From the NCBI GenBank assembly GCA_044892525.1, contig CM097885.1:189534001-189598000 (forward strand): 64,000 nucleotides of DNA. Direction: 5' to 3'. Each line of letters starts with the position of its first letter. Within the stretch, counting starts at the first letter, position 1. This document shows positions 5,995-57,149 of this stretch, piece by piece. A program made the position numbers and the translations under genes. The stretch is from Schmidtea polychroa. Taxonomy: Eukaryota. The notes under the pieces were generated by a model that was not told the DNA's origin, ran no database searches, and worked only from the letters and a program-made list of their open reading frames with translations.

Positions 5995-6072
5995 TTGATT
6001 ATCCAGTTTTACTCTGGCTCTAGTTCCTAACGCTATTTTGTTTTATTTCAATATCTACCCGCTGATAATTTT

Positions 6073-6090
6073 ATCACGTCGGGCTCACCA
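6073..6090 (-). promoter_or_regulatory. Primer binding site complementary to tRNA-Trp 3' end
   Basis: Minus strand TGGTGAGCCCGACGTGAT. Plus strand atcacgtcgggctcacca matches the animal tRNA-Trp 3' end (ATCACGTCGGGGTCACCA, from memory) at 17/18. Confidence 0.85.
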
Positions 6091-6093
6091 AAA

Positions 6094-9360: not shown

Positions 9361-9503
9361 TGATCTCGTTTCTTCAATTTTTGTTTTTGGTTTCGTCTAT
9401 AGTATCTCCGTCAGTCTCGCATTGCGTGCTTTATTTGCGATGAGGTCTTGAACAATATCTTCTTCTGATCGTCTTGAATATACAACTTCAGCTAAAGCTT
9501 TCC

Positions 9504-16199: not shown

Positions 16200-17230
16200 T
16201 CAATTAAGGATATTTACTATGGTTCGAAATCCCAATCATAGACAATTACTATGATCATATTAAATTAAGCCAGGAGACCGGAGGTCGAAAGTCATTTTGG
16301 TAATTTTAGAGAAACTTAGAATGAATCAATTCAGATCAAAGCTGTCACACAATCGACCGGAGTCGAAACGCTGGTAAGAAGATGTAAAGGGATGTAATCA
16401 TTCTGGTTCCGTCCGGACTATGTAAAGAATGTGCACCAAAGGATCAATCAGTACGATCCGTGATCTGAAGATTATAATTAGAGAGCAAGCCGAACGCTTG
16501 AATGGCATGGCAGCTAAATGGCACGTGGATCACGGCTTTAGAAAAGAGCCCACATACTTGGAACACGAATTGTTTCACGCAATGCTCACTCTTGTGGCTA
16601 AGTTATCTAGCAACCGCCAACTCTAGTTCCAGATGGAAAGAAACCTGCCACAAAGTCTCATCCAGGGAAACACGAGCCGAACTAAATCCAACGACTGAAA
16701 AGCACACAGATAACGGCCCAATAAAAAAATCCGATGGAAGCGAACGATTTGTTATTATGGTTTTGATTTGATTAATATTAAATGTGTTATTATACTTTGT
16801 TAATTAATGGATTTAAATAAGTAAACATCACAGAGATTCAAATTAGAAAAAGGGAAAGTCTAGTGACAGTAATGAAATGTATTTAATGAGTCAAATAGGC
16901 TTAAACACGATAAAAATATAAACTAAAACGAGAAGGTTTAGCCAAAAGTAATGAAATATGAAATAGGGACAATAAAAAACAAGGCACAGTACCTTCTATG
17001 ATAAGCCAGTGAACCCAAAGTTACGTCAGAGTATCAGCAGTCCTTGAAATTGAGCTCACCTTTTGCTGAGGATTACCCAATAAGGTACAGAACCAACGTC
17101 ACTTGTGACGGGTACATAGTGAAATCGACAACAGATATGAGCAGGTGAAGTAAATTGCGATACGCAACAGAGATCGGGGAATGGTGTAGAAAATTGATTT
17201 TGTCCTCTAATTGTAACCCATTAATACAAT
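16200..17230 (+). repeat. Diverged copy (C) of the dispersed small-ORF / structured-end repeat family
   Basis: Shares CCGGAGGTCGAA (16278) with 41596 and the ordered motifs ACCTTCT, GTGAACCC, GCTCAC, ACCAACGT, ACGGGTAC, GTAACCCA with 45410-45602. Confidence 0.55.
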
Positions 17231-17279
17231 GTTCCTTTGAGGTATCATTAATATTTATGTATTAGTCTAAGGAATTTTA

Positions 17280-22970: not shown

Positions 22971-23113
22971 CTATAAACTTTGAATCGAATATAATAAAAT
23001 ATATTTTTCCTAAAATGGGCGGAAAATCTTGTTGTTTAAAAATATTGATTTGTCACTAATATTTTATTTTAAAAATTATGTAAGATTATTAGAGAATATT
23101 AATTTAAACAAAC

Positions 23114-25700: not shown

Positions 25701-25869
25701 ATATTGAAATGTAAAAGAATTTAAAATACGAGCCGCAAAAAGCGATGGTTATTAGATGGGTGGTGACTATAAATAGGTTAAAAACCGCTGAAAGAACCGT
25801 CGAAAATTTTTTTATTAAAAACATTATTTTTTCATTAAATAAGGCTTAATTTATCACTTTATTGTTTTA

Positions 25870-25931
<62 letters not shown>

Positions 25932-26808: not shown

Positions 26809-27231
26809 AACTGTTGAGAAAATGCTGAAAATCACGATTCTAGACTATTTGCGACAACTAATTTATATTTTATATCTAAATAGTTATATTCCCTTCATAA
26901 ATAATGGAACACTGTGTTGTTAATACAATTGTATATTTACATGGCCAGAGATTGTTCAGCGGTCATAAAATTCAATTGAAAAATATATAGAAATTGATAA
27001 AAATTGATAAAAATATTGATAAAAATATAGAAATTGATGAAAATCTTTTATTTTTTGGTCACCTTTAATCTGTTTTCTATTTTTGATGATATTTTATTTA
27101 TTTTTATTCTGAAAAAAATCAATTTTTTGTATAGTATAGAAAATTGATTTGTGATAGAATGAAAGTAAATTATATCAATATTATTGTATATTAACAAAAA
27201 AAAGTCCAATTGAAGAAAATGAAATATTTAC

Positions 27232-28597
27232 TTCTCTTCCAATTGCTGTCGTAATTCATGCACCTCAGCTATACTTTCATCGCGACTCTTTGTGAGAGCT
27301 TTGATCATTGATTCCACTTTTGCCATTTCTTCAATTCGAACCCGCTGCAATTTTGATTCCCAATTCTCCTTTTCTCCTTCTTTTATTTTACTCATTTCCA
27401 AATCCTTACAAACCGCATATTCCAATTCATTTCTCAACTCCAACATTTCTTCTTGTTTCTTTCGCAACTGTTCAACTAAATTCTCGATTTCGAATTTTGC
27501 ATTTCTCAGTTCGGTTTCTTTCTTCAAATTTTCCCCCGTCATTCTCGACACCAAACGAGCGATTTCTGAGTTTTTTCCCGAGACGTTTTCTTTTTCTTTT
27601 TCCACTTGATTTGCTAATTCTTTCGTTTTGTTTTCAAATTTCTCCAGTTCCAATTCGAGAATTTCTTTTTCTTTTTCGATTTTCAATTCTTTTTCTCGCG
27701 CTGCATTTAAAACGGATTTGATTTCGTTTTCCAATTTTTTGGCAGTTTCGATTTTGCTTTTTAATTTATCGTTCTTTTCGTTGATTCTTCTCGTTAGATG
27801 TTCGATTTCTTTCACTAAGTTTGTTTCGTTTTCTTTTGCGTGAAGTGCTTCGGTTTCCCGTTTCATTTTTTCGATTGATATTTCACTTTTGTTTGCCAGC
27901 TCCATTTCTGTTAATTTCATTTCCAATTCTCGGATTGTGTTCTCTTTTTCGGTGAGGTTTCTCAAAATTTCCGCTTTACTTATCCTAGTTAAATCCAACT
28001 CTTTACTGGCTAATCGATATTTCAGTTCATAATTCATCATTTCCGTGTGGACTTGTTCGGTTTTCCTTTTCAATTCTCCTTCTCTTGAACGAAGGGTTTC
28101 TTCGACATCTGCCATTAATGCATATTGCTTTTCTTTGGTTTCGGATTCGAGCTGGATTATTTTTCTTTCTAATTCTTTCACGACAGTGGCATTTTCATCT
28201 TTTACTCGTTGAATTTCTTTTATTTTCTCATTCTTAATGGATTGTGAATCATTGAAAGCTTTATCAATAACTTGTTTCATTTTAGTTCTTAACTCTTCTT
28301 TTGTTTCATTTGACATTTGTAACTCAGTTTTTAATCTATCTACTTCCACACTTAAAAGACTGATTTTCTCTTCATTTTCATAAACTGAATCTCGTAAGTT
28401 AATATTTTCCTGTTCGATTTCATTTATTTCTTTATCCCGTTCTTCTAACAGATTCAGATTATGCTTAAAATCTATTTCCAATTGAATAAATTTTTCTTGA
28501 AATTCCATTAAAGCAATTTCAGCTTTATTGTGTTCTATTTTCGTTTTTTCCAATTGCTCCAACAAAAGATCTTTCCATTCTTTTTCCTTCTGAAAAA
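27232..28597 (-). CDS. CCDC57: CCDC57 coding exon 2 (large coiled-coil exon)
   Basis: KEKEWKDL, DFKHNLNLLEERDKEI, ELERKI...ELKYRLASKELD and WESK...ESMIKALT follow the remembered human CCDC57 motifs in order. Donor GAGAA|gtaaat explains the ORF-track stop. Confidence 0.9.
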
Positions 28598-30518: not shown

Positions 30519-31740
30519 ATATTGGTGGGTTAGAGGTAATCCAAAGTTTCTACCTACTCATGCTGTTTCCAGCATAACCCAGGATACAATTGACAGCTGA
30601 CCACTTGATACCCGTTGAGCAATCAACGTTGGTACTGTATCAAGGGTTTGAGTACTGGCAAAAAGTGAGCATACTTAGCATACTATAAATGTCTAGCACC
30701 CATTAGGGTTCACGGACTGCCGATAGAAGGCTTAAATCCGATTTCTCTCGGTCCCATCTGTGCTAATTGATGTTATCGAACAACCAGAATACATATAGAC
30801 ACATGAGTTAACATAATAACAATATTTTTATTCAAATCATACAATTCATGGCAAGAGTTCATAATGCTCCGGTAGACTCTTTCGGGGTAGTTATTGGTAA
30901 GGTCGGTTGAATTGGTCTTTGGACTAGGCTGGCCCGTCGTAACCTGGCCCGAGCAGCCTTACCCGGCCGGACCTTCTTCCTATGGGAAATAGAAGCTGCG
31001 AGTTCATTCGGCCTATGCAGTACTTCTATCAGAAGTTGAATCTTGGTGATTACGTCTCGATCGATCGCTTGTTGATGAACCTGGGTTTCAAGTTCTCTTA
31101 CCCTCAGACGGAGAGCTCGTAGTTCGACTTGGTCTTGAGCGCTCTACAATTGTAACTAGGAAATCAGTTTCAGGAGCTTCTGCATCTCCGCGGCGGGAAC
31201 CAAGAGCTTTACGGCAATGTGCTTTGATTCTCTTCAGCTTGGCCCTATACACTTCCGTCTGTTGTTGCGCTCGTTCCAGGTCCAGGTGCATATCTTCCAA
31301 GAGTTTTATCACTAAATCAAAAGCATAATTAATGACATGTCCTTTCGTACTCTCGTCAGGCGACCCCGCCTTTTCGCTATAATTATCGTTTCATAAAATG
31401 CGATCGTCAAGCTGTAATCCTGTTAAACTCGCTGAAAGCGTCCATGATTTGGGTGATAAACGAAAAAATAAAATAATAACACATTATGAATAAATTAGAA
31501 TATAATCAAAGACGATTAAATTAATATTATACAAATGATCATCTATTCAGAATAACTAAGGTGCGTTAAGTATGTCATTAAAAAAAATCAAAACAAAACA
31601 GGATCACAAGGGGCTGATATTCGGCCCAACTGTTTAATTTGTTTATTCCGATTGGATTTTTCGCGGACGTCCTCGTTTTCGTGGCTGATCTGTTTCTGTG
31701 GGACGCATGCCCTGTGGTGGTCTTCTTGGGCGTTTACTTT
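30519..31740 (-). repeat. Copy A of the dispersed small-ORF / structured-end repeat family (3' part)
   Basis: RKRGRPRK at 31681-31658; ORF2 exon from 31311; 30601-30638 matches the reverse complement of 45486-45523 at 36/38. Confidence 0.8.
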
Positions 31741-31972
31741 TTTTATATGACATAATTTACAATAATATTTTACAATTGGCCAATTCCTGATTAGTAACTT
31801 TAGTTTAGTAAATTAATTTACAGAGATAAATATTGGTTTTTAACTTTTATAAAGAAATTGTGGATTAAATAGAACACCAATAAAGTCCAGAGATAGTGAT
31901 TTTCGAAATAAATCATTATCATAGTTAAAATATATTTATAATTTCAATAAAAATATTCACAGGCATTTGGAT

Positions 31973-34105
31973 TTAATGTGAATTTTGTGGCTGAATACTA
32001 GAAGCCAGTTTTTCAATGTCAGGTTGAAGTTTAGTTGTTGCCAGAATCATAAGTCCATTCGAGTTCGAATCAGTAAGGCGTGAACGATTCTTGCTTTTAA
32101 TCAATTTCATTGCAGAAAATGACTGCTCGCATCTGTATGTGCTACCAAAACGACAAACATAACGTTGTGCAAAAGATCGCATATGTTCAAAGTCACTCTC
32201 TGGGAGCAGGTTCCAAAATGATATCATATCATCTGCAGTTGGAATAACCGGAAGCTCGGCGAATCGACTTTTCAAAACTGAGTTACACTTCAGATCTATA
32301 ATTTCAAGTTGCAAATTCTCATCTAGGCAGTTGATCCTTTTGTCTGGAAAGTTGAAAGGATTGGTAAAAAGAGCCGCATTGTCAGACTGATCTGCAAATT
32401 CACTGAATCGTGACTGAAAAGCTGTCAAAAGTTCGACAACCATACACCTATATTTGTCTTCATCAAAGTCATTACCTGTCATCCTTTCTTTCATGTGTTG
32501 AAAATTGTCAGATTTTTTTTGGATAACTGATTGGCAAATAATTGTAATTTCATTTTGAAAGAAGCAATACAGTTACACAGATTTGCAAACAGATTGTTAC
32601 TTGCTTGCAACTTCAAATTTAGATTGTTGAGATGCCCTGTAATGTCCACCAAGAATGCTAAATCATTCAGCCATTCATTATTTGAAAGATATTCACGTTC
32701 TATAGGTAACTCATTAATTTCCGCCAAAAATTCCAAAATACTTCCTTTTAAATCTCAGAATCGCGACAGAACTTTACCTTTTGACAACCATCTGACCTCA
32801 CAGTGCAGAAGAAGTTCACCATATTCAGCATCTAATTCTGAAATAAACTGTCTAAATTCTCGCCTATGCAATGATTTTGCACGGATTTTGTTCACACACT
32901 TCACTACTACATCCATAACGTGCTTCATATTCATGGATTTCCCACAAAGCGACTCCTGGTGAATAATGCAGTGATATTTTAAAAGTGGACGAGCAAGAAA
33001 TTTTTCGAGCAAAGACAAACATCCTACATGTCTGCCTGTTAGAGCTGGTGCACCATCTGTGCAAATGCTATCCAACCTTTTCCAATCCAATTTATTTTTT
33101 TCTGCGTATGATTTTAAAACCTCAAACAAATCTGTGCCTTTGGTTGTCTCTTGTATGGACTCAAGTCCAAGCAACTCTTCGATAACCTCGAAAGTATTAC
33201 TCACCGCGCGAATAAAAATTGTTACCTGTGCGGTATCGCTAATGTCAGTTGACTCGTCCATTGCAAGTGAGAAAAACTTGCAGTTTGATGCGTGAAATGC
33301 AATTTGCTCACTAACGTTATTAGCAAGTTCCTCAACCCGTCTTGTCATTGTATTGTTCGATAGTGGAATATCTTTAAACTTGGCTTCAATGTTTTTTTTC
33401 TCCTAGCATTCTGGCGGCTATTTCAAGAACTGGCTTCATAATCTCTTCTCCATCAGTAAAGGGTTTCTTCTTCTTTGCCAAAAGAAGTGCCACTTCATAC
33501 GATGCAATTACCATACTTTTGTTTTGCTGTAGTATAGCAGTAAATAAGGATTGTTGGACATTCATTCCTTTCTCCTTCTTGGCGATAAATTCCCTTCGTA
33601 AATCAGAGGCCATTGGATATTTATCGACCAAATCTGCATGGCTACTGTTGAAATGTCTTTCCATATTATATTTCTTTACAACTGAAACGCTAAATCCACA
33701 AACCAAGCAGACCGGCTTTCCGTTACGACCAAGAGCAAACATATACCTCTCTTTCCACTCGTCATTAAATTCACGACATGCTAAGTTTTTATATTGTTCA
33801 AACTTTCTTTTATCCATGATTTTAAATTCCGAGCTCGTTTTTTAACCAAATTAGATAATTAAAAGAATTTATAAATAAAATCAGAAGATTGAAATAAAAT
33901 CAGATTATTGATGAAAACCAAGCAAAATTAATCGATACACAGTTCTTTTATTATTAAATTGGCATCTGGTTTTATCATGGTTTAAAACGAAGTTCAAGAC
34001 AAACTTTTCCCAAAGAAGGTGTGAATGTGAATTTTTTCTTAGTTTTCTTTGTTGAGCAGAGGGCCACTTTTTTATGCCCGGCGGGCCACGGGTTGGGAAC
34101 CATTG
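31973..34105 (-). pseudogene. hAT transposase (GTF2IRD2/SPIN-like), near full length with frameshifts, 5' TIR present
   Basis: BED-like CLVC...NMERHF, FSLAMDESTD, CTDGAPAL, HCIIHQESLC, EVRWLSKG, FGSTYRCEQSFS; TIR CAATGGTTCCCAACC at 34105. Confidence 0.92.
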
Positions 34106-34229
34106 ATTATTAACTCACAATAAGGTTTCTTCTTCGTCGTTTTTTGTTGTTTTAAAAATTTTGGCCCTTCGTGTCCTCCACCTAAATAAAGTGGCCCTAG
34201 GCCAAAATAGGTTGGGAACCACTGCCGTA

Positions 34230-35698
34230 GACGAATGGACAGGCAGAAATGTTAAACGATATTTGAACGTAATCTTACACAGTAAAAATAAAGCGCATGC
34301 CAATTGAAAGTTCGTGCAATGCAGTTAAGTTGAAAAATTTGGTTAAAGAAAAATTGCTTTGCTTTGGTCTGAAATTTGCGGAAGACATTATCGCTTCCAC
34401 AAACGATGGAGCTGCAATGATGAAAAAATATGGAGGGTTAATAGAAACTTTGTTCCAATCATTCTATTCACCTAGCAGTAATTGATGTTTTTTATAAAAA
34501 AATTGTAACCGAAAACATAATTTTTGATGATGTTGAAGAAATAATTACAACTTTTAGACCAGATATTAATAAAACATTAGCAGAAACCAGAACCGTTATT
34601 AAAAAATTTTAAAATTCACCGGTAATGAACTCAATTTTGCAAAATTATGTCAGAGACCATAAAGGCAAAAATTTGAGTATATGTTAGATTGTAAAACCCG
34701 CTGGAATTCTCTTATCCCAATGATTGAATATTTATTAAAATTGAAAGAATGTATCAAGAAAGCACGAATGATATTGGTTGTTTCGATATTTATAAAGAGG
34801 AAAATGAGGTAGTTTTGGAAGAAATTTTAACAAATATGAAACCAACTGAATTGGCTGTTAACGAATTAAGTAAAGAAAGTGCTACGTTGTTAACTTCTGA
34901 AGGTGTTTTTAAATTTTTGTTTGGAAAGCTTCATGAAATTAATACTAGTTTCATTAAAAAGTGCATTAAAAACTTGAATGAACGACAGACGAAATGAAAC
35001 AGTAATGACGTTGTTGCTATATCTCCAGTGTGGAAAAATGCCTCGAGCCAATGGTGATTTTACATATTCGTCAAAAATTGTAGTTTGTGAATTTGCAAAT
35101 GTTCTTTTGAATAAAATATATCCGGTTTCTGCTATTTCTGAAGAAGCTGGTAGTGACAGCGTGTCAACAGACGGTTGCTTCGAAATAGAAGAAACAGATA
35201 CAAATAAGCTTAATCAAGACATGCACAGGGCAATTTCATCCGTTTTGGTCATGAATAATAGTTCTAATACTGGAAAATATATAAGAGATTTAAAATCAGA
35301 TTTTAAAATATTAGATGTAACCAAGAAGCGTACAGAAAATCTTGAACGATTATACGAGGCCTTATTAACTATAAAACCAACATCTACGGCTACAGAAAAA
35401 GTTTTCTCAACAGCAGGAAATTTCTTGACCAAAATAAGAAGCCGCTTAAACTTCGAATCATTAGATGCACTAATTTTCTTAAAGTGTTATTTTTTAAATA
35501 AAGATAAATAATTCTATACTCTACTCATCAATTATATACTATTTTTTATACTCTATAGATTATAATATATAATGAATTAAAAATATAAAAATATATGAAT
35601 TACAAATATGTTGTTTTTGTTAGAAATACTCGGTTAATTTTCCTTACAGATACTCGAAAACTCGGTTAGTTGATTTTGCCGAGTAATTGTTAGCCCTA
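34230..35698 (+). pseudogene. Second hAT-family transposase remnant with 3' terminus
   Basis: TNDGAAMM, CKTRWNS, PTSTATEKVFSTAG...RSRL..ESLDALIFLK dimerisation motif; end TTAGCCCTA at ~35698. Confidence 0.85.
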
Positions 35699-38281: not shown

Positions 38282-41200
38282 TTAATGAGAATTAAAAAAT
38301 TTTTTTTTAATTATTTCTTTTTTTATTTAAATTTTTCCGGTTCTTTTTCTTAAATTCTGCACTTTTTGTCATACCTCCTAAAAACGAGCAATAACAATCT
38401 TAATAAATTTGGTTATGGTTCTTCTTGTCCAATACGACCAATAATCATTCTTAATTTGTTATATTATTAATAATTAATTTTATTTAATATTCTTTTATGT
38501 TCGACTTAACAGATTTTCCAAATGCGTTGTTTCTCTCTTAACTATGTTGTGATTGCAACTTCTTGCGTTTTTCAATTTTATTATACGTGTTTTATTTATT
38601 CTCAACTTGTTGTGTACTTTAATTTGTATTATTTGATGCATAATCATAGATTTTGTGAGATTTTCATGCTATGTATTTTCGACTCATTTAAACAAGCTCT
38701 CAATTCTTTGGTTCTAGCCTAACAAGATGTAAAAAAAATTAAGAATTTAACTGATAATTTTTTGAAAAAAATATTTTGTCCCTAAGTCTATTAATTTATT
38801 TTATATTACATCTACTACACAAATTTCTTTTTTAGCAGCTTTTCATTAATATTTATAATTTTATTTATAATTTTATTTATAATTTTACAATTAAAATGTA
38901 AAAGTTACTTGTTTAAAAGTAATTCCTCTTGGATTATTATATCATTATTATTATATTTATGTAACTAGTATCACATTATTCTAGATAAAGATAAATATGA
39001 ATTACAGAGTTTTTATAAATCTTTTTAATCAAGCTTTAAATATTCGTTACTTTTAATAAGCAGTTTGTTTAAATTTTGCAGGATATTCAATTTGGTTTCA
39101 ATATGGGAATAATAATCTAATCAATCTAATAGTAGCCATATTGACTGTAAATTGTGTAATCAAAATGAACGTTATTTACCCATTTTAGAATTTTTTGCCA
39201 TGATAAAAGAAATTCAATTAATTGTGTTTCTATGAAAGTAGTAAGTTTTTTATCTTATGACTCCGTATTAAAATATCCAATTTTATGTTGCTAATATATA
39301 ATTTTTTTTTAATTTGGTTTATATATTATTTAATATTGTATCTTAAAATGTTACTAACAAGTACAAAAATTATCATTAAAAGTTATTTTGGTTTTTCTCG
39401 TTAAAGTTCGTTATCAAAATTATAATCGTTGGAGCATTTTGTGACGATAGAGAGATTTATTAAATATAAATAACTCATCTACATTTGGTGCAAGCAACAT
39501 ATTTGATGATATTTATAAAAATATTCTAAACAGAGCTATTGATCGTTTGGATCCACAATATCTCTTTAGTATTTCTGCATGGTTGTAAACGTAAAATGAT
39601 ATATTTACTTTCGAATTTGAAATGTTTTTTGCTTCGATTCTGATGTTTCATCGTCATTTTTATTTATGAAATGCTTGACAATAGTTTTACAGATATCACC
39701 ATTTTTTCATATTGTTTATTGTACATTATATAAAACCACAATTGATGTGTTTAACATTATATTGAATAAAATTTTATAGTACCACAGTAATATATTTATC
39801 GTTTTATGACTTTCATATTCACTTTTTTTGTTTGCCGATGACAATTTCTTTTATACTAAGATACTTCTCACTTGCCTGTACAAAACAAATGTATTTTGAA
39901 GCGATATATCCGTCACGTATGCTTTTGGTACTGTACTTTAATAGTGTAAGGGGGGTAGATTGTCCCTATGCAGAGTCTATATCCCGCATTCTTTGTATCG
40001 AATTATATTTATACATTTTAATAAGCACAGTTCAGTCATACCCCTCTTCCAATTAAATTCCGATTTTCTTAATAAAGTTCTAGTTTTATTTATTATTTCC
40101 GATAACAGTTTAAGTTCTAATTTATACTGAAATTATCCGTTTATCTTCCCAATTTAATTAAATTACCTCAACTATCGATAATAAAAACTACAACATTTCA
40201 CTGAACTCGTCTATTTAATCTATTTAATTCATTTGTTGCTTTGATCATAATTGCATATTAGGGTTATTTATCCACAATGTCCTTATTTTACTAGCTTATC
40301 ATACACCTTGAAGTTGTTTAATTCGTCCTTCGTCCACTTTTTACCATATTTCTTTTACCGTTTATCACATGCCTTTATTATGTTCACTATATACATACTC
40401 ATTTATCCTGGTAATCTCATTTGCCTATTGTGTTTATTCTTATTTGTTTTTCAATTACGACTAATAAATAGTTTTAATTTTTATTGATTTGCAGTTAAAT
40501 ATTAAGAACAGAAAATAAATAATAATTTCAAATTATACATCAAATATATTTATGATAACTAAATTTATGGCTTTAATTGTTGTATTAAAAATAGTTTTTA
40601 TGAAATAGGAAATGGTAGATTTTAAGGATAAGATTTAAATTAATAGAAAATTTCAATATATTAAATGAACTTATATATATTTATGTTCTGAACTTTCTTT
40701 ACCCGCAAGGTCATATAAGATTTTATCTACTAAATTCATAATAGGTTACAATATCTAAAAATTGAATTTAACAACAATCTTTGATCAACTTTAGTCTTTT
40801 ATCATTGGATTGTTCTAAACTTTCATCATCCTCAAGGGCATTCAACGTCTCAAGCCCCCTCCCTTTGGTACTTTCAACTATCCAATGAGCATTGGCGATA
40901 ATTTGCACAGGAAAAGGTGATCGGGCAACTTTAGTTACATAAAACATTGAAATTGTTTAAAACAGAAATGAAATCACGAAATGATCTCGAGGTATTAAAC
41001 AGGAGCAACGATCGTTCCTCTTTTCACCCGAGCCAAAATTTGACAAGGATAAAAATACTAATCACACCAAAATTAACATGGAATGTTCTGGAACCGTTCC
41101 AAATCCATCATGGACGTCAAATTAATGAAAAAAAATTTAAAAATAAAAACAAAAATTATGGCAAAAAAATTGCCATTAAAAATATCAAAATTGCGAAATA

Positions 41201-44200
41201 GAAAATTCTGGAATAAAAAGAATTCGAGTTTGTTTTAATGCATCAATACATACACGTGTACAAAATAGGTATATATACCGACACGTTTCGGTCACAAAAA
41301 ATCACTTTATGCAAAATTTTTGTCGACGAATTTTTTCGAGAAACCAATAGTAGGTTTTTTTTTGATTGATGTAATTCTACGTTACATATGTTAATCATTT
41401 ATGTAATTATTTTAATGTAAGCTATTTCTTAATTAAAATGTCCTCAAGATCTAATTTTTGTCTAATTAAGTACGACTGATCAGCGGCGTCTTAGTGCGTC
41501 TCTATTCAGTCCTGCATTTGATTATAATAATTTGTCTTATGAAGCACGCATACATGCATTATTATTATTTATAGAACTTTTGTTGTTCGGGTCAGCCGGA
41601 GGTCGAACTACTTCATGGTCCTGCCATGGAGTTGGGTCGAGGAAACCCTCCGCTTGACTCTTCTTATTTATTAAAGGTCAGCCGTAAATGGTTGACTTAA
41701 CATACAACATTAAGGTTTGTCGAAGTGGTCACAGTGGGGCCATGGAAGCAATATTCTTCCCGACTCAATGCACACAGTCAAACTCAACATTTAAAATCAG
41801 CCCAACAAAAATACCCTAAGGTTGATAAATTGAGTAGATCTCATACCTAACTTAATGACAATTTTGCAAGTTACATTCAATTTAGACGGTTAAAGTATCA
41901 ATTTCAAAGCATAATATTAGTTTCCAAGTAGAATCTTAACCACACTATATAACTTAAGTGGGGGTATAATCGAAAAGTTGACCGCTCATACAGTTTGAAA
42001 AGGCAAATGATGGAAATGCCCTACTCCCAAGACAGTTATACCCGTATGTTATTCTTAAAGATATGATGCGTAAAATGCACTGCCTCCAACCTATCAACTA
42101 TAATCATTTACTAAGTGGAAAATTATAATTTATACCACCCTATCAACTATAATCATTTACTAAGTGGAGAATTATAATTTATATAACCCTAATTACAATA
42201 TAAGATCACTTTCAAATTCCGAAATGTAATTCATCAACATATAGCTATAGAGTATTACTAAGTCCTCGAGTTGAAAATATAATTTATCAATCCATGATGG
42301 TAAACGATAAATATTTATCAGACGTAAAAGTATAATTTATAAATATTTAGTTTATCGTTTTAAGTCCGAAAAATAATTTACGAACCTCTAATTATAACGT
42401 ATAAATGGCTTTCCGATGTTAAAAACATAATCTATAATCTCGTAATCATATCATATGATCAATTTTAAATTCAGAAACAATTTATAACCATGTAAATATA
42501 AAGTATAATCGAGCGTTGATATAACTTATAAAATCCATAATTATAAATTCTAGTTATTTGCCTAACGTAGAAATATAAATTCTAAACCCAATGATTACAA
42601 AATAAATCCTTTTGAAGTTCGAAAATATAGTCATAGACATATAATTAAGAAACGTAACTGGTCTTCAAAGTTAAAAATAGCATTGATAAATTTGTAACTA
42701 TAGGCATAACCATGTATTACGGGAAAAATATAATTCATTTATAAGGTATCAGTAAACTTTGAGTTAAAATAAATTGTATAAGTCTACAACTATAATTATT
42801 ATCAAGTATAATCTAAAGTTACCTTTAGGATTATAACTTATACATAAATATAATCCATAATTCATAACCATATATTAAGTATACAATGTAACTTATAATT
42901 ATTCACTATAAAATACAAATAACTTTCGAGCTGAAAACCTAATTTAGAAGTGTAAAAAATATAACTTATTTATAAAGTTTACCGTTAGAATCATAACCTA
43001 TACATGAATATAATCTATAACTACATCGCGAGTAGAAATTGTAATTTATAATAGCTCACTATAAAATAAATTCCAAGCTAAAACCGTTCATAAGTGCAAG
43101 GAATATATTCTAGTCATATAGCACAATTAAGTTGACAGGTTAAGATTATAATTTATAAAATTATAACTATAAAATATAACGATGTATTAAGTATAAATAC
43201 AATGGGTAATTTTCCCACTATAACGTACGAGCAAAAATTCGAGTTAAACATAACTTAGATATGACTAAATTGCAATTATTTTCAAGTTCGGATACCTAAT
43301 TAAATAATTTTAAGTTGGAATATAATTTATAGCAGTATACCCACCATACTATAGTAGAACTACTCAATGTGATTTATAAGTGGAACTACCACGAACTCCC
43401 TAATATGCTAGTTTAACCTTGAGACACGTGCCCTATAGTCGTTATTAATCGTAAATGCCATCATTATGACCACTGTTGTTGCTTTTGACCTAGAAGGGTG
43501 AATTTTAAACTAAAACTCGAATTACAATATATCTTAAATTCACTTACCATAAGGAGATCTCTCTGTTCAATCATTTTTCGTATTAACCAGCATCGAAATC
43601 TTCTGAAATGTCGAGGAGCCAGTCACAGATAGGGCGATTATTCCTCTGGGATAGGGTTGATGGAGTAGATTTCTAAAAAACGAGAAGCAAAGTATAAAAA
43701 GCAGATCAGGCTATTATGAACAGCTTCGCTGACGAAGAGACATTGGATTGCGACTCAACGATGAGTCCCTCCGTCGACGAAGCCTTCCTTTGAAGCCAAT
43801 AGGGTTAATAAATAATTAGAAAATCTGAATTAGACATTTAAAATTTTTGAATAATTTTCTTTATTGTAAATAATTGATTAATGGTTTTGAACCATTAAAA
43901 CAATCGAATTTAATTCTTAATTCTAATCTTACGGAAAACCAAATTGACAGGTCGAACACTATAAGGAATATAGATAAACCCCAAACGAAAATACAATTTT
44001 GGATAATTTCCTTTTGGTTGGGTTGTTGGCTTGTTTGGAGGTTAAGTTCCTGAGTCACCACCGAGTTAGGTATCAACAGATTGCGCCTGTGATGAAATAA
44101 AGGTGATGTTAAAGTCCCTTAGGTGAGTTTCCTGGTTACGGATTGCTAATGGAAATTTAATCTTAAGCCTATAGTCTAGACATTTTTCACCGCATAATCA

Positions 44201-44232
44201 TCAACAGACTTTTATTTTGGGTAATCATAGAT

Positions 44233-44598
44233 ATGCCACAATCAAGCAGCCATAGTAAAGAGGAGGACCACAGGCAAATGATCACACGGCTCCGTACACG
44301 GTACGTCTGGCACCACATCCACCGGTGGAACCAGGGACGAGACCTGGATTGCACAAATCGAGTGATCCGGAAGGGCCCCGAAGTAGATGCCCCGGCGAGG
44401 GTGAAGGAGGAGCCGGAAAACGATCTTTTGCAAGAGGCCCGTGACCGAGCGGCCGTCGAGGTGGACGCAGCCCAGATGTGACTGAGAAAGCTCGACCTGC
44501 AAATCCGGGCAAACCGAGAAGGAAAGGCTTTGGAGGACCTGGAGGAGGCCGAGGCGACCTCGCGAAAAAGAGGGAGGCCTCGCAAGTACCCGGCCTAA
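44233..44598 (+). CDS. Repeat-family ORF1 with C-terminal AT-hook (one internal TGA at 44479-44481)
   Basis: RLRTRYVWHHIHRW matches RLRSRWIWYKIHDW at 53536-53823; in-frame RKRGRPRK at 44563-44586. Confidence 0.6.
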
Positions 44599-44863
44599 CT
44601 CATTCCCAATTCTAACCCACGATGGACATGTAGCCTGATTTATGTGATGATGAACCTCACTTGAATAAATTCCCTCTTTACTACATTAATAAATTTGATT
44701 TAATGATGAACTTTACTTCGAACCAATTGCCTTTTTAATAAATTATCGCAAAATGAGTTTATTTATCATAATGATAAAATGTCTTTATAATCAGTACTGA
44801 CCTTATTATATAATCGAACGAATCTCATGGCGTAATGACATAATCTAAGTATATTCCTTTCAG

Positions 44864-45222
44864 TGATCAAACTGTTTGAGAACCTACGGAAAGACCGAGA
44901 AGAAGCACAAAAACAGGCCGAGGATATGAGGAAGAAGGTGGCGCAGGTCCTCCAACTGCAAACCCAAGCGGCACAGGATCAGATGGAGATCCGGGCCATG
45001 AAGCTCCAACTCCGTGCGTTAGAAACCGAACGCAATGAACAAGTGGTTCACGGAGCCGCAATAAGTCAAATCCGGCCGTTGACCGTGGAGTTGGCAGCAA
45101 TGTACCCTCCGGCCGCGAAAGTCAAACCCAAAAGGAAGCGGCTGGGACGGAACATCCGGGAAAAATTGAAGAAAGCTAGATTGGCCGAGTATGAACGCCA
45201 AGAAAGGTTGACGTCCAAGTAA
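44864..45222 (+). CDS. Repeat-family ORF2, coiled-coil and basic tail, probably a spliced 3' exon
   Basis: IKLFENL...AQKQ matches IKLLEDM...AQQQ at 31311; both begin directly after an AG acceptor in the same phase. Confidence 0.55.
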
Positions 45223-47329
45223 TCTCCGCAATATGAACAGTTATTTAGGCTATACGCCTTGAATTTTCTTTTGTTATTGTTATGGGTAAATACATTTTCG
45301 TTAGAGTATTGTATGAGGTATGTTGTTTGCAAATATTGAGTGATTGAGAATGAGTGTGTTGAGATTTTGGGAAAACAATCTCGATAAGGGACCGAAAGAA
45401 ATCGGACACAAACCTTCTAACGGTAGTCCGTGAACCCATAGAGTACTCGACAATTATAGTGCCTCGATGCGCTCACTTTTAATCAACAGTACCAACGTTG
45501 ATTACTCAACGGGTACCAAGTGGAAAAACAATGTTGTATTCTGGGTTACGCTGGTAACAGCACTGAATAACAAACACCCGACCACCTGTAACCCACCAAT
45601 ATTATTGGTCAATTTTTTCACTATACACTATATCCAAAAGTAACCCAGAATGTGAAAAAGTTGTTGAACGGAATTTTTCCATTTGCACAAATTTTTTGTA
45701 CAAAAATTAGATCAAGTCTGTCAGATAAATCGTTGACTGCACTTTTTTTAAAAAATTTTATTACAATAAGTCTTGTAATAAGAAAAATGTAGAATTGTAA
45801 ACTTAAGAATCAATAAAAATTATACTCATCGATTTTCTTGCATTTTGATAAAAAACAGAAAAAAAGCTGTTAGCAGATGTTTTTTTGAAAGTTCTCTTTT
45901 TCAGAAACCCTAATTATTATTCGTTGTTAAGTTCGTATAAATAATTTGTTATTTGACACTGAGCTGAAATCGATACTGTCAATTATATTCACTACTCAAA
46001 CACATTATAAAAAATGAAATCATTATGGGTTTCGTAGTTAAGGTTCTTGGCGATGTTCTAATGGGGTTACTCAATGTTTTTCTCTCGCTACCTTATTTCC
46101 TCTCGTTCTGTGTACAATAATAATTCTCTTCTTCACGCCAGATGTATATTTTTTCTTTTTGATTATTCTTCTGGCTTTAATTTTATCCTAAACTCTAAGC
46201 TCTTCCAAAGTCTAATGATTAATAACACATTAATGAAATTAAATCGCAAAATAAACTGTTGATTGAGTGCATAAACCTTTGAAAGTACTCGGTTTCTTGT
46301 TCGACTTTTCTGGTATTCTTGAGTATAAAATCAACAAACATTCAACAAAATATAGATTTATTAATACCAAATATACAACACTAAAATATCGCATTGAACT
46401 CAAAAAATGTCAATAAATTACAATGAGTTATAGTACTATGTCGTATATGGAGAGGTCAGCTTTCAGTAACTTTATACGTCTTTCGTTTATTCGTTAATGC
46501 CTTAATGTTAATTTTTTGGGACAGGAGCAGTCATTTATTGATATATTTATTGCTTTGTTGAACGGATTGTCACTTGATAATGTCCAATCAAATGTGCTGT
46601 ATTCAGGGATTATTTTTTGGTTTTCCTAATTACATAAATTGTCTAGCGTGGGTTACACCAGATAACCAAAGCAGCGCCTCTGAATCCTCGGAATTATCAT
46701 TAAATTGCATCCTATCCAATTAATTTTTAAATCTTAATAACAATAATAATATTACTAATAATACCAATTTTGTTTATTTATTTAATTTATTCATATTTTC
46801 CAGCATGATATAGCCATTTCTATTTAATTTTAATATATGATTCTTTCTGAAAAAATCACCCTCATTTGACTGACTTTATATTAAGTTCATTTAAGAAGGT
46901 AGATACTAACTCTGTATACAACCCCATTCACCCATGATACACTGGATGGTCGGTAGGGTACAGAAGGGTAACAATGTTCAGGTCAAAGTGAACTATTTAT
47001 TCTCGTATAAAAAAGTCTACCGTAAAGTTCTGAATATAGTACCCCCCCCCCATAGAGTACCCCGGGACACTAATAGCAACATTTTTCCAAATACAGTGTA
47101 CAGTAATTGGATTTTTTATTTTTTGGAAATTATTTTCGAACTTCATATTGGATTTATATTTCATGCTAGTTTTATTCTAACTACTACTAAAACCATTATG
47201 CAAATGGTGTGAAACTTTATCTATTAATATATCCATTTATATTTGTTAAACATCATTTTGACAAGTATAAATATAGACAAGGAGGCCGAAAATATAAACG
47301 ATTTTTGAACAAATTCTCATTTGACAACT

Positions 47330-48759: not shown

Positions 48760-49565
48760 TGAATATAATATCCGGGTACTCTAATTGGAAAATGGCAATA
48801 TTCTATAAAAATAATAAATCCAATTAGTATACCCGGGTATATATATAAGTTGTAGATAATAGGCAAATAGTCTATACAATTAGATGGATATATTTGCTAT
48901 GGATTTATATGAAGAAATTAAGTTTTTTATAAATATCGTGCCTGAAAATAAAACTGATTTAGAATTATTAAAATATATTAAAAATAACTTGTCGGCAATT
49001 TATCCGAATTTAATTAAAAGTCTGCAAATATTGTTGACGACGCCTGTTACCGTAGCTTATGTTGAGGGATCATTTTCAAAGCTGAAAATCATAAAAAAAT
49101 TATCTACGTTCAACAATTAGTCAGGATGTTTACTTCATTATCAAATTTGTTAATCGAAAAAGAAATTGCAAGAGAAATAAATTACGATGATATAATTGAA
49201 GAATTCAGTACAAAGAGCTCGAAAAATAAAATAGATTTATTTATACATTCTATGTATAAATATATGTATAAATCAATAGTATATACTAATGATTTCCAAT
49301 TTTTCAAAGTTATAATTGCATTGCAGTTTTCAAAATACTGATAGAAAATTGTGATATATGTATATTTTTATTGAAGTTATGGAAGTTGGTAAATAACTTA
49401 TTGAAATATCTTATATATGCAACGATGTGATGTCAATCATATTGTATATTACTAATTTATTACAGCAGATTCCAATCAATTAGGTTGAAAAAAAGCAAAT
49501 CAAATTAATAAAAATAGCCCCGCGGTTAACCTCGCACATGGCCCCGCAAATGTTCAAGCCGTCGT
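48760..49565 (+). pseudogene. hAT (ZMYM1-like) transposase C-terminal remnant
   Basis: YPNL..SLQILLTTPVTVAYVEGSFSKLK dimerisation motif; ggccccgc-rich terminal region before the gap. Confidence 0.8.
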
Positions 49566-50479
49566 TGATTACTGTATTATTAATAAGATTATATTTTTTA
49601 TTAATTCTCTTTAAAAGCCTCCTTTTTGATGTGAATTGATTTNNNNNNNNNNNNNNNNNNNNNNNNNNNNNNNNNNNNNNNNNNNNNNNNNNNNNNNNNN
49701 NNNNNNNNNNNNNNNNNNNNNNNNNNNNNNNNNNNNNNNNNNNNNNNNNNNNNNNNNNNNNNNNNNNNNNNNNNNNNNNNNNNNNNNNATTTGGGCTACA
49801 TAAAAAAGCTGACGCCGAAAAATCTATAATCATACTAGGTCATTGTTAATATATGGCATGAATCGCTGTGGCCGATTGACGACACACTGTATATTCGATA
49901 TAAACGACCTGTTAATTTAACAAATAATTTATCATAATTAAAATATAAAAATAATCCATAAAAAGTGTATATTTAAGTCTATATTCTCTTTATTATAGAA
50001 TATTATCAGTAATTTATTAATATTTAGTTCATTTTTTTAATTAAAGACCCTATAAAAATGAAATAAATATTTAATAATAAGTTTAGAATATTTTATCATA
50101 GAAATTATTACAAGTTGGTAGTTGCAATTATAGATATATAAAAATATTATAATTAATATTATCAAAATTTTCATATATTTTATCATAAAAATTATTTTTA
50201 TCCCCTACAGACGAAAACGTAAACTCGCTCAATACCTCTCGGATTATGAACTTCAGTGACTACCTCCACCGTCATTGTCGCCTTTATCTTTCGATACGAT
50301 CCACGTAATTCGGCGGGCATTATTGTAGTGCCTCTAACTTCCATATTAATAAAAATATCAATTTAAACTTAAAATATATTATTAAATTAATTGTAACTAA
50401 ATCAAATTAAAATCATTGTTTAAATAATCTTTTCTTTTAAAAAAAACAAACGATATAAAACAATTCATGAATCATTTGA

Positions 50480-53399: not shown

Positions 53400-56300
53400 A
53401 TTTGGTAGACTCTTTTAGTGATCAATTCCGCATTAGGCGTTGCTATTCTCATCATTATACATATTTCCTCCGCTTGCGGTCTTGGTTTCAAGCTCAGTTC
53501 GTCCTGGATTTTTGATAACTGGTCTGCTTTTCGATTTAGTCGTTGTAGTGAATTGCTTGATGCAACCGGTCCACCGCCTCATCGAATGCGTCAATCAAAG
53601 CCAGAGAGGTGTAATTGATGTAGGGTTCCGTCTTCGGGACCACTGGGACTACGTTCTGGTAGGTCCAATCATGGATCTTGTACCAGATCCATCTGGACCT
53701 CAGGCGGGTGAGTTCTTCCTCCTGGTCCAGTCTGGTGACTTCGTCTGCCTCCTGAGTTGTTCCTAGGCTCGAGTCGGTTGATGAGGGACCGGCCTGCACA
53801 TTTCTTGATCTAGTGTTGGGCATGTCTATAATGATAGAATTTAATCGAAGTTTTGTTCATGCGCCCCAGTTTAGTCAACGAAGGACGCTTGGTACGTGGT
53901 TACATTTCGAACTCTAGCATCATACTCATTCCATCGAATCGCTAATGATTTCTTATGATTTAAAGCGGACCCCCCAACCCCTAGTTGGTTCGATTTACTT
54001 CTGGCTCGAATAATAGTCTATGTCATCTTCATTGTCGGTGGAATCGTCTTCCGAAATTTCACCATTTTCTAACCGCTTCAATATTCTCTTCATCTCTTCT
54101 GGTCGCATTTTTGATAAATTTCTATAATAAAATAAAAATAATTCCAACACCAAGCTATGCAGAAAAATAATGAAACGGAAGTTCAAAAAGTTTTTATAAC
54201 TAAAGAATTAGTAGGTAGGTTTTATGTAGGGCGGAATGCCTGAAGCATCAAAATTGATACTCACAAAAATAGCACTAGTTTCTTCAAGTAAAACATGCAC
54301 TCGCAAAAAGTAATTATATCATAGCGAAAATAATATATTCACTTACCTCAAAAGTATTTATATTCTTCAGAAAAAGAAAATATATCAAATTTGTATTCAA
54401 CAAAACTTTTAGTAAAATGTGTTTATTTGTTCACTTTGCCGCGCAAGTAATATGTCATAGATAAAATAAGACAATAATGACATTTGTTTTTTTTTTAATT
54501 TCGTTGGAAAGAATATTATACAACAGTAAAATACGAACAGCCAACCTATAAAAAAACTAATAGTAATGTGAACATTCGGTTTAAAAGATTGGTATCAAAA
54601 TTGAAACTCTAGGTTATTAAGGGTTAAAGGAGAATAATACCATGAAATGGATTTATAGCTTTATTATTTTAAATGATAATAGTACAATGAAATGGATTTA
54701 TCATTTTATAATATTAAATGATAATATTACAATAAAATGGATTGATCATTTTATGATATCTAAATATTATTAAATGTGATTAATACCATAAAATGGGTTT
54801 CTAATTTTATAAGATTAAATGATAATAGTAAAATAAAGTGGGTTTGTAGTTTTATGGTATCTAAATAATATTAAGTGTTAATGATCCAACGAACTGGATT
54901 TATCATCTCAAGACGAAACTTGGGGTCAATGCAATTTGTAATAATTAAGCTAGACTTTAGTTCGAATACAAGTGAACACACAAGAAAAATTCTTTATGAA
55001 ATAATTTAGAGGTGCTTTTTATAATTAGTCAAATTTATATAGGGGTTGCCGATAACATGATTCTAAATAGTGTGGCATAATAATTAATATCTATATTCTT
55101 ATGAAACGTCCTTCTAGCTGGGGAAACCTCAATAACCAGTTTTTAAATGAACTAAGATGTCTGTTTATGAAAATCGAACGAGGTAGGCTCTCTTATACTA
55201 AGGTAAAATACAATGATCATTAACCTATAATTTCATGAGATGTCTTTTAACCAAGGTTGATTTATGATATGGTTGTTAATAAATAATTAGAGGAGGCATA
55301 ATTTTAGTTCGTACCGATTCATAACCAATTTTACATAGTACGGGTATCGATATAGGACTTTATTGAATACATTTTCGTAATTGGATTTAAGATTTAAGGT
55401 TTATCACCCCAATGATCTGGGATATTAGTATTCAATAGATCATTATAAGGTAGATGATTATAAAATTGAATTTCCCTAGATTCGGGTTATTGGGTACTAA
55501 ATTTCTGATCAATATAACTATGAACAATATCAATAGAATCTATTAATAATATTCAATCTTAAGTATACTAAATAATAGAATGACTTGTGTGATTAGCCGA
55601 CCATCAGAGTGCCTTTGTAGTAAATTGAGTCTGGGATATTTCCCGTTTAAATTTCCCTAATGGTGTGTTTCCTATAGAACAGTTGAGTGTTTATTTTAGG
55701 CATGTCATTTATCGAAAGGTCGAATTAATTAAAATTTTCCTATTTTCCCGACTCAACTGAATACGGTACGATATGCCTTATTGTATTATTTTCCCCGCGA
55801 TTATTATCCCAAAGGTTATTTCGTCCGCATAGTCCCTATGACTACGCCAACTACCGGGATGGGTTTACCCGCCCTACTCATGGTTAAACATATCCGGTTA
55901 AAATTCATAATTTTAATGCATGTAGGGTCGTAGACCCGAATTTGTGAATGTAGATTATCAGTTAGAAACAAGGCTGATCGGCGTCGTGAGTATAACACGT
56001 CTACGACGATGCCGATCACTCTTGTTCCGCAATAGTAAAATTAAACAATAAAACTAAAGTTTGACCAAAAGGGGATTTTGATCCTAACGCATTAATAAAG
56101 CAACAAAAAAAATCAATATAATGAGACAAAATAGGATAACAAATAATAAAATAACAATTATTCATATAATAACGTTAATCAATAGTCCTTACTATTAGTA
56201 TGTTCTGGATCCTCCGAAAAAAATTTTTGGCATAAAAAAGATTAAATTGTGACTAAAATGCGTCGGTATATATACCTATTTTTGTGTGTGCAAATACACG

Positions 56301-56465
56301 TGTATGTATTGATGCATTAAAACAAACTCGAAGTCTTTTTATTCTAGAATTGTCTATTTTTGATATTTTTAATGGCGATTTTTGCGCCATAATTTTTATT
56401 TTCTAATTATTTCTTGCTAATTTTACGTCCATGATGGATTTGGAACGGTTCCAGAACATTCCATA
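53400..56465 (-). repeat. Copy D of the dispersed repeat family (5' block, AT-rich tract, ORF1)
   Basis: 56200-56465 is an inverted copy of 41070-41340; AT-rich tract 54640-55560; ORF 53823-53536 homologous to ORF1 of copy B. Confidence 0.65.
53985..54623 (-). mobile_element. piggyBac-like 5' end fragment inside copy D
   Basis: Terminus TTAA-CCCTTAATAACC at 54627-54612; acidic N-terminal-like peptide ISEDDSTDNEDDIDY. Confidence 0.5.
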
Positions 56466-57149
56466 TTACTTTTAATTTAATTTTTATTTTAATTGATGTT
56501 TTCTGAATTTCTTTTTAAGAATTTTTATTTTTATTGCTAATTTATTTATTTTGGTGACCTTTATTGTTTTATGTGGCTTTCCTGATGGTTTTCGCCATCG
56601 TCATGAAATGTTCTGGGATTTTCTAGAATTTTTCGATGTTTTACCATCTTTCTAAGCTATTCGAGTCTGTTTTTTTGTCATTCTATGTTTCTTTGCTATT
56701 TTTGATTTATATTTTTGCACAACTTCTTGCTTTTGTATTATTTTATTTAATTTCTGGGTTTATATTTTTGTTGTTTTCCCTCTTAATTACTATTGTTTAC
56801 TTGGTGTATTTTTATATTTAACTGTACTTTTTGCGTGCTATGTACCTACGCATTCCAGTCACAAATTATAGTTTGGGTCTAGAAATCAGTTCTAGCCCAA
56901 CAGTATGAAAAGAAAATTCGTTATCTACTGATGAAATTCATTAATACAAAATATTCAAATTATACTTAATCCTTGTAATTGGTCAATTTTCATTTTCAAT
57001 TTCCTTTATCTTCATTTCAAATTATACATTAATATCTACTTATCTAATTTATGAATAAAAAATTGTCATTTCTTTCATGAAATGAAGGTATAAGGAGTCG
57101 ACGATAAATTCTATAAATTTTATTTAACCCCATTTATTACTAAGTTAAT

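What the first reader, a model, noticed from the sequence alone, without database searches (positions are those of the whole stretch)
41070..45602. Undescribed-looking repeat family encoding an AT-hook protein and a coiled-coil exon, with no transposase or RT
Seen: four related copies (16.2-17.2 kb +, 30.5-31.7 kb -, 41.1-45.6 kb +, 53.4-56.5 kb -). RKRGRPRK is encoded by different codons in A (CGA AAA CGA GGA CGT CCG CGA AAA) and B (CGA AAA AGA GGG AGG CCT CGC AAG); RLRxRxxWxxIHxW is shared by B and D. B begins near TGTTCTGG; A has AATAAA before the structured end. Known: AT-hooks bind AT-rich minor grooves; some retroviral LTRs encode accessory proteins; giant LTR elements (Burro) occur in Schmidtea. 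Inference: either multi-kb solo LTRs carrying their own regulatory genes or a new non-autonomous element, with protein-level selection.
Basis: partly seen in the sequence, partly recalled or inferred. Interest (0 to 1): 0.78.

Follow-up and report, generated by a model that had tools for sequence, protein, structure and literature searches.

The report
Decayed repeat family with small ORFs
The window holds four broken, very diverged pieces of a mobile-element family that has conserved end modules and two small genes (an AT-hook protein and a coiled-coil protein) but no replication enzyme. Its class and its novelty could not be settled from this window alone.

Summary
The quoted motifs are real. 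"Four related copies" is too strong, because the pieces share modules, not length.

- **What is shared.** Copy 3 (41049-45603, +) is the only unit with both ends. It shares a 5' module (about 290-700 nt) and ORF1 with copy 4 (53455-56493, -). It shares the AT-hook, ORF2 and a 3' module with copy 2 (30519-31753, -). Copy 1 shares only a 240-nt 3' module (16991-17232, +).
- **State of the genes.** No copy has both genes open and complete. ORF2 of copy 3 has no stop or frameshift but lacks the start codon seen in its intact relatives.
- **Selection.** ORF2 shows saturated synonymous change (pS 0.67-0.98) against pN 0.18-0.42. The AT-hook differs at 6 of 8 codons with no residue change. The end modules are better kept than synonymous sites.
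- **What is absent.** No RT, integrase or transposase lies in or beside copy 3. There is no Pfam, Rfam, PDB or viral match.
- **Relatives.** The only ones in 1.8 billion protein representatives are two intact 157-aa ORF2s on tiny metagenome contigs.
- **"Exon".** ORF2 looks like a separate cistron, not an exon.

Best reading (0.4): a non-autonomous, probably RNA-mediated element whose proteins act like Gag or ORF1p. Main rival (0.3): solo LTRs of a giant LTR retroelement. PBS, TSD and TIR tests were negative or inconclusive.

The parts
41049..45603 (+). Copy 3: the only unit with both a 5' and a 3' module (about 4.5 kb). The 5' bound lies between 41049 and 41079.
   Evidence: Alignments to copy 4 and copy 2; nhmmer.
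41049..41330 (+). 5' module. It has a 40-nt stretch identical to copy 4 from 41078, which contains the palindrome TGGAACCGTTCCA, and a conserved TATA-like palindrome GGTATATATACC near 41268. Weaker homology runs on to about 41745.
42050..43350 (+). AT-rich degenerate tandem array (units of about 49 and 155-160 nt with an ATAATTTATA core).
44233..44598 (+). ORF1 of copy 3, 122 codons from ATG to the stop after the AT-hook. It is broken by one in-frame stop. The AT-hook codons are 44563-44586. GC 0.59, GC3 0.68.
44863..45222 (+). ORF2 of copy 3 (coiled coil plus basic tail). It has no stop or frameshift, but lacks the in-frame start codon that intact relatives have.
45376..45603 (+). 3' module, ending ..TAACCCACCAATAT. 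Its hairpin at 45489-45516 is kept in copy 1 through changes on both sides of the stem.
30519..31753 (-). Copy 2. It has a 36-aa ATG ORF ending in the AT-hook (31643-31753), a spacer of about 330 nt, ORF2 (30859-31312; broken by at least one frameshift, no in-frame start), AATAAA, and the 3' module (30519-30769). A hAT remnant abuts its upstream side.
53455..56493 (-). Copy 4. It has the 5' module (56215-56493, homology to about 55746), a tandem array (54624-54906), and ORF1 (53455-53823, 123 codons; broken by three in-frame stops, AT-hook core decayed). It has no ORF2 and no 3' module.
16991..17232 (+). Copy 1: only the 3' module is demonstrably related. The GC-richer stretch upstream (16.26-16.77 kb) has ORFs with no detectable similarity to ORF1 or ORF2.

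Best explanation
These are four old, decayed insertions of one family of non-autonomous mobile elements, most likely RNA-mediated. The unit is about 4.5 kb:
- a strongly conserved 5' module, read as an internal or proximal promoter;
- an AT-rich tandem array;
- two small cistrons;
- a conserved, partly structured 3' module of about 230 nt at the very end.

ORF1 (about 121 aa) has a helical region with a W/R/H motif and a C-terminal AT-hook. ORF2 (120-157 aa) is a coiled coil with a basic tail.

**Shown:** the modules, the sharp shared ends, the absence of any enzyme gene, and past purifying selection on ORF2 and the AT-hook.

**Inferred:** the two proteins bind and package the element's nucleic acid, in roles like Gag or LINE ORF1p. 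The 3' module is the handle recognised by the polymerase of an unidentified autonomous partner. The 5' module drives transcription.
For: - The 3' end is shared to the base in three copies, and homology stops there. The 5' start is shared in two copies, including 40 identical bases.
- The end modules (72-83% identity) are better kept than synonymous sites of ORF2 (pS 0.67-0.98), so they are constrained as nucleic acid.
- A stem in the 3' module is kept through changes on both sides.
- ORF2 has pN 0.18-0.42 against saturated pS over nearly its full length. The AT-hook changed at synonymous sites only.
- ORF1 spans 122 and 123 codons from ATG to the stop after the AT-hook in copies 3 and 4.
- Intact ORF2 relatives exist elsewhere (P0001, P0002).
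- There are no enzyme domains in copy 3 or within about 5 kb of it.
- Three 3' ends against two 5' ends is what 5' truncation would give, although four copies are too few to show it.
Against: - There is no poly(A) or simple-repeat tail, and no TSD round copy 3.
- No partner element with the same 3' module is in the window.
- If the TATA-like palindrome about 190 nt inside the unit is the promoter, the RNA would lack the first 220 nt. A stand-alone retroelement could not restore them, which favours the LTR reading.
- Copy 4 lacks its 3' part, which 5' truncation does not explain.
- Only three or four sequences are available per module, so the covariation evidence is thin. The fold z-score of the 3' module is only -1.6.
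Confidence: 0.4

Rival explanations
1. The pieces are solo or fragmentary LTRs of a giant LTR retroelement (Burro-like or another Ty3/gypsy lineage). The two ORFs would be accessory genes carried inside the LTR. The 5' module would be U3 with its promoter, and the 3' module would be U5.
For: - The unit is several kb with sharp ends, a conserved TATA-like palindrome near the 5' end, and AATAAA shortly before the 3' module in copy 2.
- It has internal tandem arrays.
- The unit starts with TG, and CA lies 4 nt from the end.
- A semi-conserved A-rich 30 nt lies before the 5' start and could be a polypurine tract (PPT).
- Giant LTR elements more than 30 kb long, with a 25-kb interior and accessory ORFs, are described in planarians (PMC6431247).
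- A gag with three CCHC knuckles lies in the same window.
- A promoter inside the unit can be regenerated only by the LTR route.
Against: - No direct pair brackets gag-pol. Copies 1 and 3 are both on + but share only 240 nt.
- None of the three 3' ends is followed by a PBS-like TGG.. stretch, unlike the real PBS near 6090.
- Conservation runs 4 nt past the CA.
- There is no 4-6 bp duplication at the inferred bounds.
- No RT, integrase or gag lies within about 5 kb of copies 3 or 4.
- With the TATA-like site at +190, R would be about 4 kb, which as far as I know is unheard of.
- There is no similarity to the LTR next to the gag in this window.
Confidence: 0.3
2. The pieces belong to a lineage-specific host gene family (AT-hook protein plus coiled-coil protein) spread by DNA-level duplication. 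The copies in this window would be its pseudogenes.
For: A promoter-like 5' module, two ORFs with past purifying selection, and a 3'-UTR-like module together look like a transcription unit. The intact relatives sit on low-coverage contigs.
Against: - The ends of homology are sharp and identical between copies whose flanks are unrelated.
- The non-coding end modules are better kept than the coding sequence.
- All four copies are broken or truncated and lie among other transposon debris.
- GC3 of 0.60-0.68 is far from the 0.33-0.37 of other ORFs here.
Confidence: 0.1
3. The pieces are an endogenised or captured viral gene cassette that was later amplified.
For: The ORFs are strikingly GC-rich in a 31% GC window. 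They have no cellular homologues.
Against: There is no match in IMG/VR by DNA pattern or protein, none in BFVD by fold, and none in Pfam.
Confidence: 0.07
4. The pieces are unrelated sequences that share short motifs by chance.
For: Most of the interior of the copies does not align.
Against: Module matches have E values from 1e-30 to 1e-66. ORF2 of copy 2 matches P0001 at 1.9e-24. The AT-hook pattern and the 5' 28-mer were never seen in shuffles.
Confidence: 0.02

Closest known systems
ORF1-only non-autonomous LINE derivatives (HAL1 type) and SINE-like elements that borrow a partner LINE's structured 3' end (from my own knowledge of the families)
   Same: They have no polymerase of their own and encode a small coiled-coil or basic protein. 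They have a conserved 3' terminal module, and many copies keep the 3' end.
   Different: Here there is no poly(A) or repeat tail, no similarity to L1 ORF1p (no Pfam hit), and no partner. There are two cistrons, one with an AT-hook, and a long tandem array.
Giant LTRs of Burro or Ogre-type Ty3/gypsy elements, and LTRs that carry coding sequence (for example the MMTV sag ORF; from my own knowledge and PMC6431247)
   Same: The unit is several kb with sharp ends, internal tandem repeats, a TATA-like site, a poly(A) signal and accessory ORFs.
   Different: No pair, PBS, PPT or TSD was found. The ORFs here sit in what would be R, not U3, if the TATA-like site is the promoter.
LARD / TRIM non-autonomous LTR elements and composite VNTR-bearing retroelements (SVA type; from my own knowledge)
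   Same: They lack enzymes and are mobilised in trans. Their composite build includes a variable tandem array.
   Different: Those carry no conserved ORFs under selection. LARD and TRIM have two LTRs, and SVA has a poly(A) tail.
HMGA-type AT-hook (Pfam PF02178)
   Same: The core R-G-R-P is flanked by K/R, at the C-terminus of a small protein.
   Different: The score is 16.1 bits, below the 17.4 cut-off. There is a single hook, and the rest of ORF1 has no known relative.

Membership tests
LTR of an LTR retrotransposon | Two direct, similar copies bracket gag-pol | tested here: not met
   Self-comparison and Pfam scans of the flanks show none. This holds only within this 64-kb window.
LTR of an LTR retrotransposon | 5'-TG..CA-3' ends with a short inverted repeat | tested here: inconclusive
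   TG lies at 41079 and CA at 45598-45599, but all three 3' ends stay conserved for 4 more bases. The terminal inverted match is only about 7 of 13, judged by eye.
LTR of an LTR retrotransposon | PBS just after the 3' end, or PPT just before the 5' end | tested here: not met
   No shared TGG.. PBS-like stretch follows the ends of copies 1, 2 or 3. The A-rich 30 nt before the 5' ends is semi-conserved, so the PPT question is left open.
LTR of an LTR retrotransposon | Target-site duplication of 4-6 bp | tested here: not met
   The best match is 5 nt (AATTT), at bounds 7 nt outside the homology. That is chance level in AT-rich DNA. An old copy could have lost its duplication.
Non-LTR (LINE-dependent) non-autonomous retroelement | Poly(A) or simple-repeat tail at the 3' end | tested here: not met
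   The three 3' ends stop at ..AATAT/C and are followed by unrelated sequence.
Non-LTR (LINE-dependent) non-autonomous retroelement | 3' module shared with an autonomous LINE | not testable with these tools
   The window has no further copy of the module, and the source genome cannot be searched.
Non-LTR (LINE-dependent) non-autonomous retroelement | Excess of 5'-truncated copies | tested here: inconclusive
   There are three 3' ends against two 5' ends. Copy 4 lacks its 3' part.
TIR DNA transposon / Helitron | Terminal inverted repeats, or 5'-TC .. CTRR-3' with a hairpin 10-12 nt from the end | tested here: not met
   No inverted repeat joins the two ends. The end is ..CCAATAT, and the hairpin lies about 90 nt from it.
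Penelope-like element / retrozyme | Hammerhead ribozyme in the terminal repeat | tested here: not met
   Rfam gives no match at gathering or E-value thresholds.
AT-hook (PF02178) | Score at or above Pfam's gathering cut-off | tested here: not met
   The score is 16.1 bits against a cut-off of 17.4, E 0.01. The R-G-R-P core with basic flanks is present in copies 2 and 3.

The most novel reading that the evidence does not exclude
This is a so far unclassified kind of protein-coding but enzyme-less mobile element of flatworm-like genomes. Its two small GC-rich genes (an AT-hook DNA binder and a coiled-coil/basic protein) and its structured ends have been kept by selection through many subfamilies. 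It would live as a parasite on the machinery of the giant retroelements or LINEs of its host.
Probability: 0.2. Interest if true: 0.7.

Novelty: new variant of a known kind. Interest (0 to 1): 0.45.

Why it matters
If the family is a stand-alone element, it would be a rare case of a non-autonomous element that keeps its own structural or regulatory proteins under selection while borrowing a polymerase. That bears on how parasites of parasites arise in genomes crowded with transposons. If it is an LTR, it would show accessory genes carried inside multi-kb LTRs. Either way, the two ORFs have no named relatives, so they add an orphan protein pair to annotate. The family is also a likely source of mis-annotated 'genes' in AT-rich flatworm-like assemblies.

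Tried and rejected
- **Searches that found nothing.** These were Rfam, ARAGORN, and Pfam on every ORF of 60 aa or more in copy 3 and its flanks. PDB by sequence and by fold also gave nothing, and BFVD by fold gave only E > 1.
- **Protein searches.** Word-index searches with ORF2, ORF1 and P0001 found nothing new. Exact look-ups of five window ORFs were not on record, so the organism could not be named.
- **Collection scans.** DNA-pattern scans of IMG/VR gave no match. The metagenome scan gave three pattern-only chance matches, L001-L003. Protein scans of viral and prokaryote contigs gave none.
- **Hammerhead lead.** A CTGACGAG..CGAAA stretch in the spacer of copy 2 has no helix II and no Rfam support, so I dropped it.
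- **tRNA-like head.** A B-box-like stretch in the 5' module is not supported by ARAGORN.
- **Copies 2 and 4 as halves of one split unit.** I rejected this because both carry the AT-hook region.
- **Copies 1 and 3 as LTRs of one 24-kb element.** I rejected this because they share only 240 nt at low identity.
- **Splice model joining ORF1 to ORF2.** There is no conserved donor, the stop after the AT-hook is kept in three copies, and the intact relatives have an in-frame ATG.
- **ORF1 fold.** The model has low confidence (pLDDT 65) and I did not search with it.
- **Papers.** No paper searched describes such a family. The Schmidtea genome paper is not held.
Full report
**Setting.** The window is 31% GC. 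It has two N gaps, 26216-26689 and 49643-49788, which I left alone. It is crowded with transposon debris:
- a gag with three CCHC knuckles followed by a PBS-like site;
- several hAT transposase remnants;
- integrase-like fragments.

This fits a planarian-like genome as described in PMC11410931 and PMC6431247. I could not name the organism, because five exact look-ups of window ORFs were not on record. No contig looked human.

**The observation.** I number the copies by position: 1 = 16.2-17.2 kb (+), 2 = 30.5-31.75 kb (-), 3 = 41.05-45.6 kb (+), 4 = 53.45-56.5 kb (-). The quoted details hold.
- RKRGRPRK occurs exactly twice. Six of its eight codons differ and no residue differs.
- The W/R/H motif is shared by copies 3 and 4 (0 of 2000 shuffles).
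- TGTTCTGG sits at the start of copy 3, and AATAAA sits before the 3' module of copy 2.

The copies are related by modules, not over their length.
- blastn finds only the two ends.
- nhmmer extends these to about 700 nt (copies 3 and 4, 5' side) and about 750 nt (copies 3 and 2, covering ORF2 plus the 3' module).
- Copy 1 shares only the 240-nt 3' module. That match is still significant with a profile built without it (E 8e-06).
- The window therefore holds three 3' modules, two 5' modules, two ORF1 domains, two intact AT-hooks plus one decayed, and two ORF2s. Only copy 3 has both ends.

**Anatomy of copy 3.**
- *5' module.* It is 79-83% identical to copy 4, with 40 identical bases at the start that include a 13-nt palindrome. 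A perfectly kept TATA-like palindrome lies about 190 nt in, and identity decays after it.
- *Array.* A 1.3-kb AT-rich degenerate tandem array follows. Copy 4 has an array of different sequence at a similar place.
- *ORF1.* It spans 122 codons from ATG to the stop after the AT-hook, against 123 in copy 4. A low-confidence model (pLDDT 65) gives a disordered N-terminus and two helices. The C-terminal AT-hook follows them; it was not part of that model.
- *Spacer.* It is about 265 nt and is not conserved.
- *ORF2.* It forms long helices plus a basic helix (pLDDT 82).
- *3' module.* It is about 230 nt and ends at the same base in copies 2 and 3. One hairpin is kept in copy 1 through changes on both sides of the stem. 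The overall fold is only modestly better than shuffles (z -1.6).

**State of the genes (counts only).**

| Gene | Copy | State |
|---|---|---|
| ORF1 | 3 | one in-frame stop |
| ORF1 | 4 | three in-frame stops, AT-hook core decayed |
| ORF1 | 2 | only a 36-aa ORF ending in the AT-hook |
| ORF2 | 3 | no stop or frameshift, but no start codon of the kind seen in intact relatives |
| ORF2 | 2 | at least one frameshift and no in-frame start |
| ORF2 | 1 and 4 | absent |

I searched the pieces apart. I built no consensus; the HMM profiles served only as search devices.

**Selection.** Nei-Gojobori counts were run on pieces taken one at a time.

| Comparison | pS | pN |
|---|---|---|
| ORF2, copy 3 vs L004 | 0.76 | 0.41 |
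| ORF2, copy 2 first piece vs L004 | 0.96 | 0.18 |
| ORF2, copy 2 second piece vs L004 | 0.75 | 0.26 |
| ORF1 motif region, copy 3 vs copy 4 | 0.75 | 0.35 |

Synonymous sites are saturated while amino acids are partly kept. Alignment by protein similarity biases pN downward somewhat. The non-coding end modules are better kept than synonymous sites, which marks them as cis-acting.

**Relatives.** Pfam gives only a sub-threshold AT_hook hit (16.1 against 17.4 bits). A full HMMER pass over 1.84 billion representatives with ORF2 gave one hit, P0001 (157 aa, E 3e-07). Its cluster has one more member, P0002. Both sit on 638-nt and 549-nt contigs of two ENA metagenome assemblies. Both are intact and differ from each other by one synonymous and two non-synonymous changes. 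They are closest to copy 2 (E 1.9e-24). Nothing else matched in any other protein, fold, RNA-family or sequence-collection search; Tried and rejected lists them all.

**Composition.** The family's ORFs have GC 0.49-0.59. GC3 is 0.60-0.68 in copies 3 and 4 and in L004. Every other ORF tested here has GC3 of 0.33-0.37. I have no explanation for this.

**Interpretation.** Sharp shared ends with unrelated flanks, constrained end modules, selected small ORFs, no enzyme and decayed copies all point to a non-autonomous mobile element.

For a stand-alone RNA-mediated element:
- the structured 3' terminal module;
- the perfectly kept first 40 nt, which could act as an internal promoter (this is inference);
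- more 3' ends than 5' ends.

Against it:
- no tail and no duplication;
- the TATA-like site lies inside the unit.

For the LTR reading:
- the size and the arrays;
- the TATA-like and AATAAA layout;
- the known giant LTR elements of planarians.

Against it:
- no pair and no PBS after three ends;
- conservation runs past the CA;
- no duplication;
- no retroelement genes nearby.

I put the stand-alone reading at 0.4 and the LTR reading at 0.3. A genome-wide census and transcript end mapping would decide between them.

Noticed in passing
1-6093 (-): This is the 5' part of an LTR retroelement. The gag has Retrotrans_gag plus three CCHC knuckles (4621-5901). Further ORFs at 3144-4663 have no Pfam hit. 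A PBS-like TGGTGAGCCCGACGTGA lies 3 nt after an LTR end near 6090. The three knuckles match the published description of Burro gag.
   Followed up: partly
8400-9980 (-) and 17290-17900 (+): These are decayed gag- and integrase-like reading frames of other retroelements. The second begins about 65 nt after the 3' end of copy 1, on the same strand.
   Followed up: no
31973-34222 (-), 34297-35511 (+), 48884-49120 (+), 58.9-60.1 kb (-): Four hAT (Charlie-like) transposase remnants, with Spin-doc zinc finger, DUF4371 and hAT dimerisation domains. CAGTGGTTCCCAACC-type ends lie near 34222 and 34102. The first remnant abuts copy 2.
   Followed up: partly
20375-20476 / 21016-21117: A 102-nt inverted repeat, 99% complementary, with 539 nt between the arms. 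It is a foldback or MITE-like unit.
   Followed up: no
25701-26808: Two pairs of 100% identical direct repeats (148 and 119 nt) abut the N gap at 26216-26689. This looks like an assembly artefact round the gap. I left the gap untouched.
   Followed up: no
10729-11262 (+); 27228-28565 (-); 23099-23836 (-): A RING-finger ORF and two long coiled-coil-like ORFs (445 and 245 aa) with only weak Pfam hits. They could be host genes or parts of a giant retroelement polyprotein.
   Followed up: no
44233-45222 (+), 53455-53823 (-), L004:144-617: The family's ORFs have GC3 of 0.60-0.68 in a 31% GC window where other ORFs have 0.33-0.37. This is unexplained.
   Followed up: partly
41630-41770 (+) and 55635-55760 (-): Copies 3 and 4 each have an imperfect long-range inverted repeat built on TTGAGTCGGGAA / TTCCCGACTCAA-like arms, 550-800 nt from the 5' start. 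It may be a second conserved structure. I saw it by eye only.
   Followed up: no
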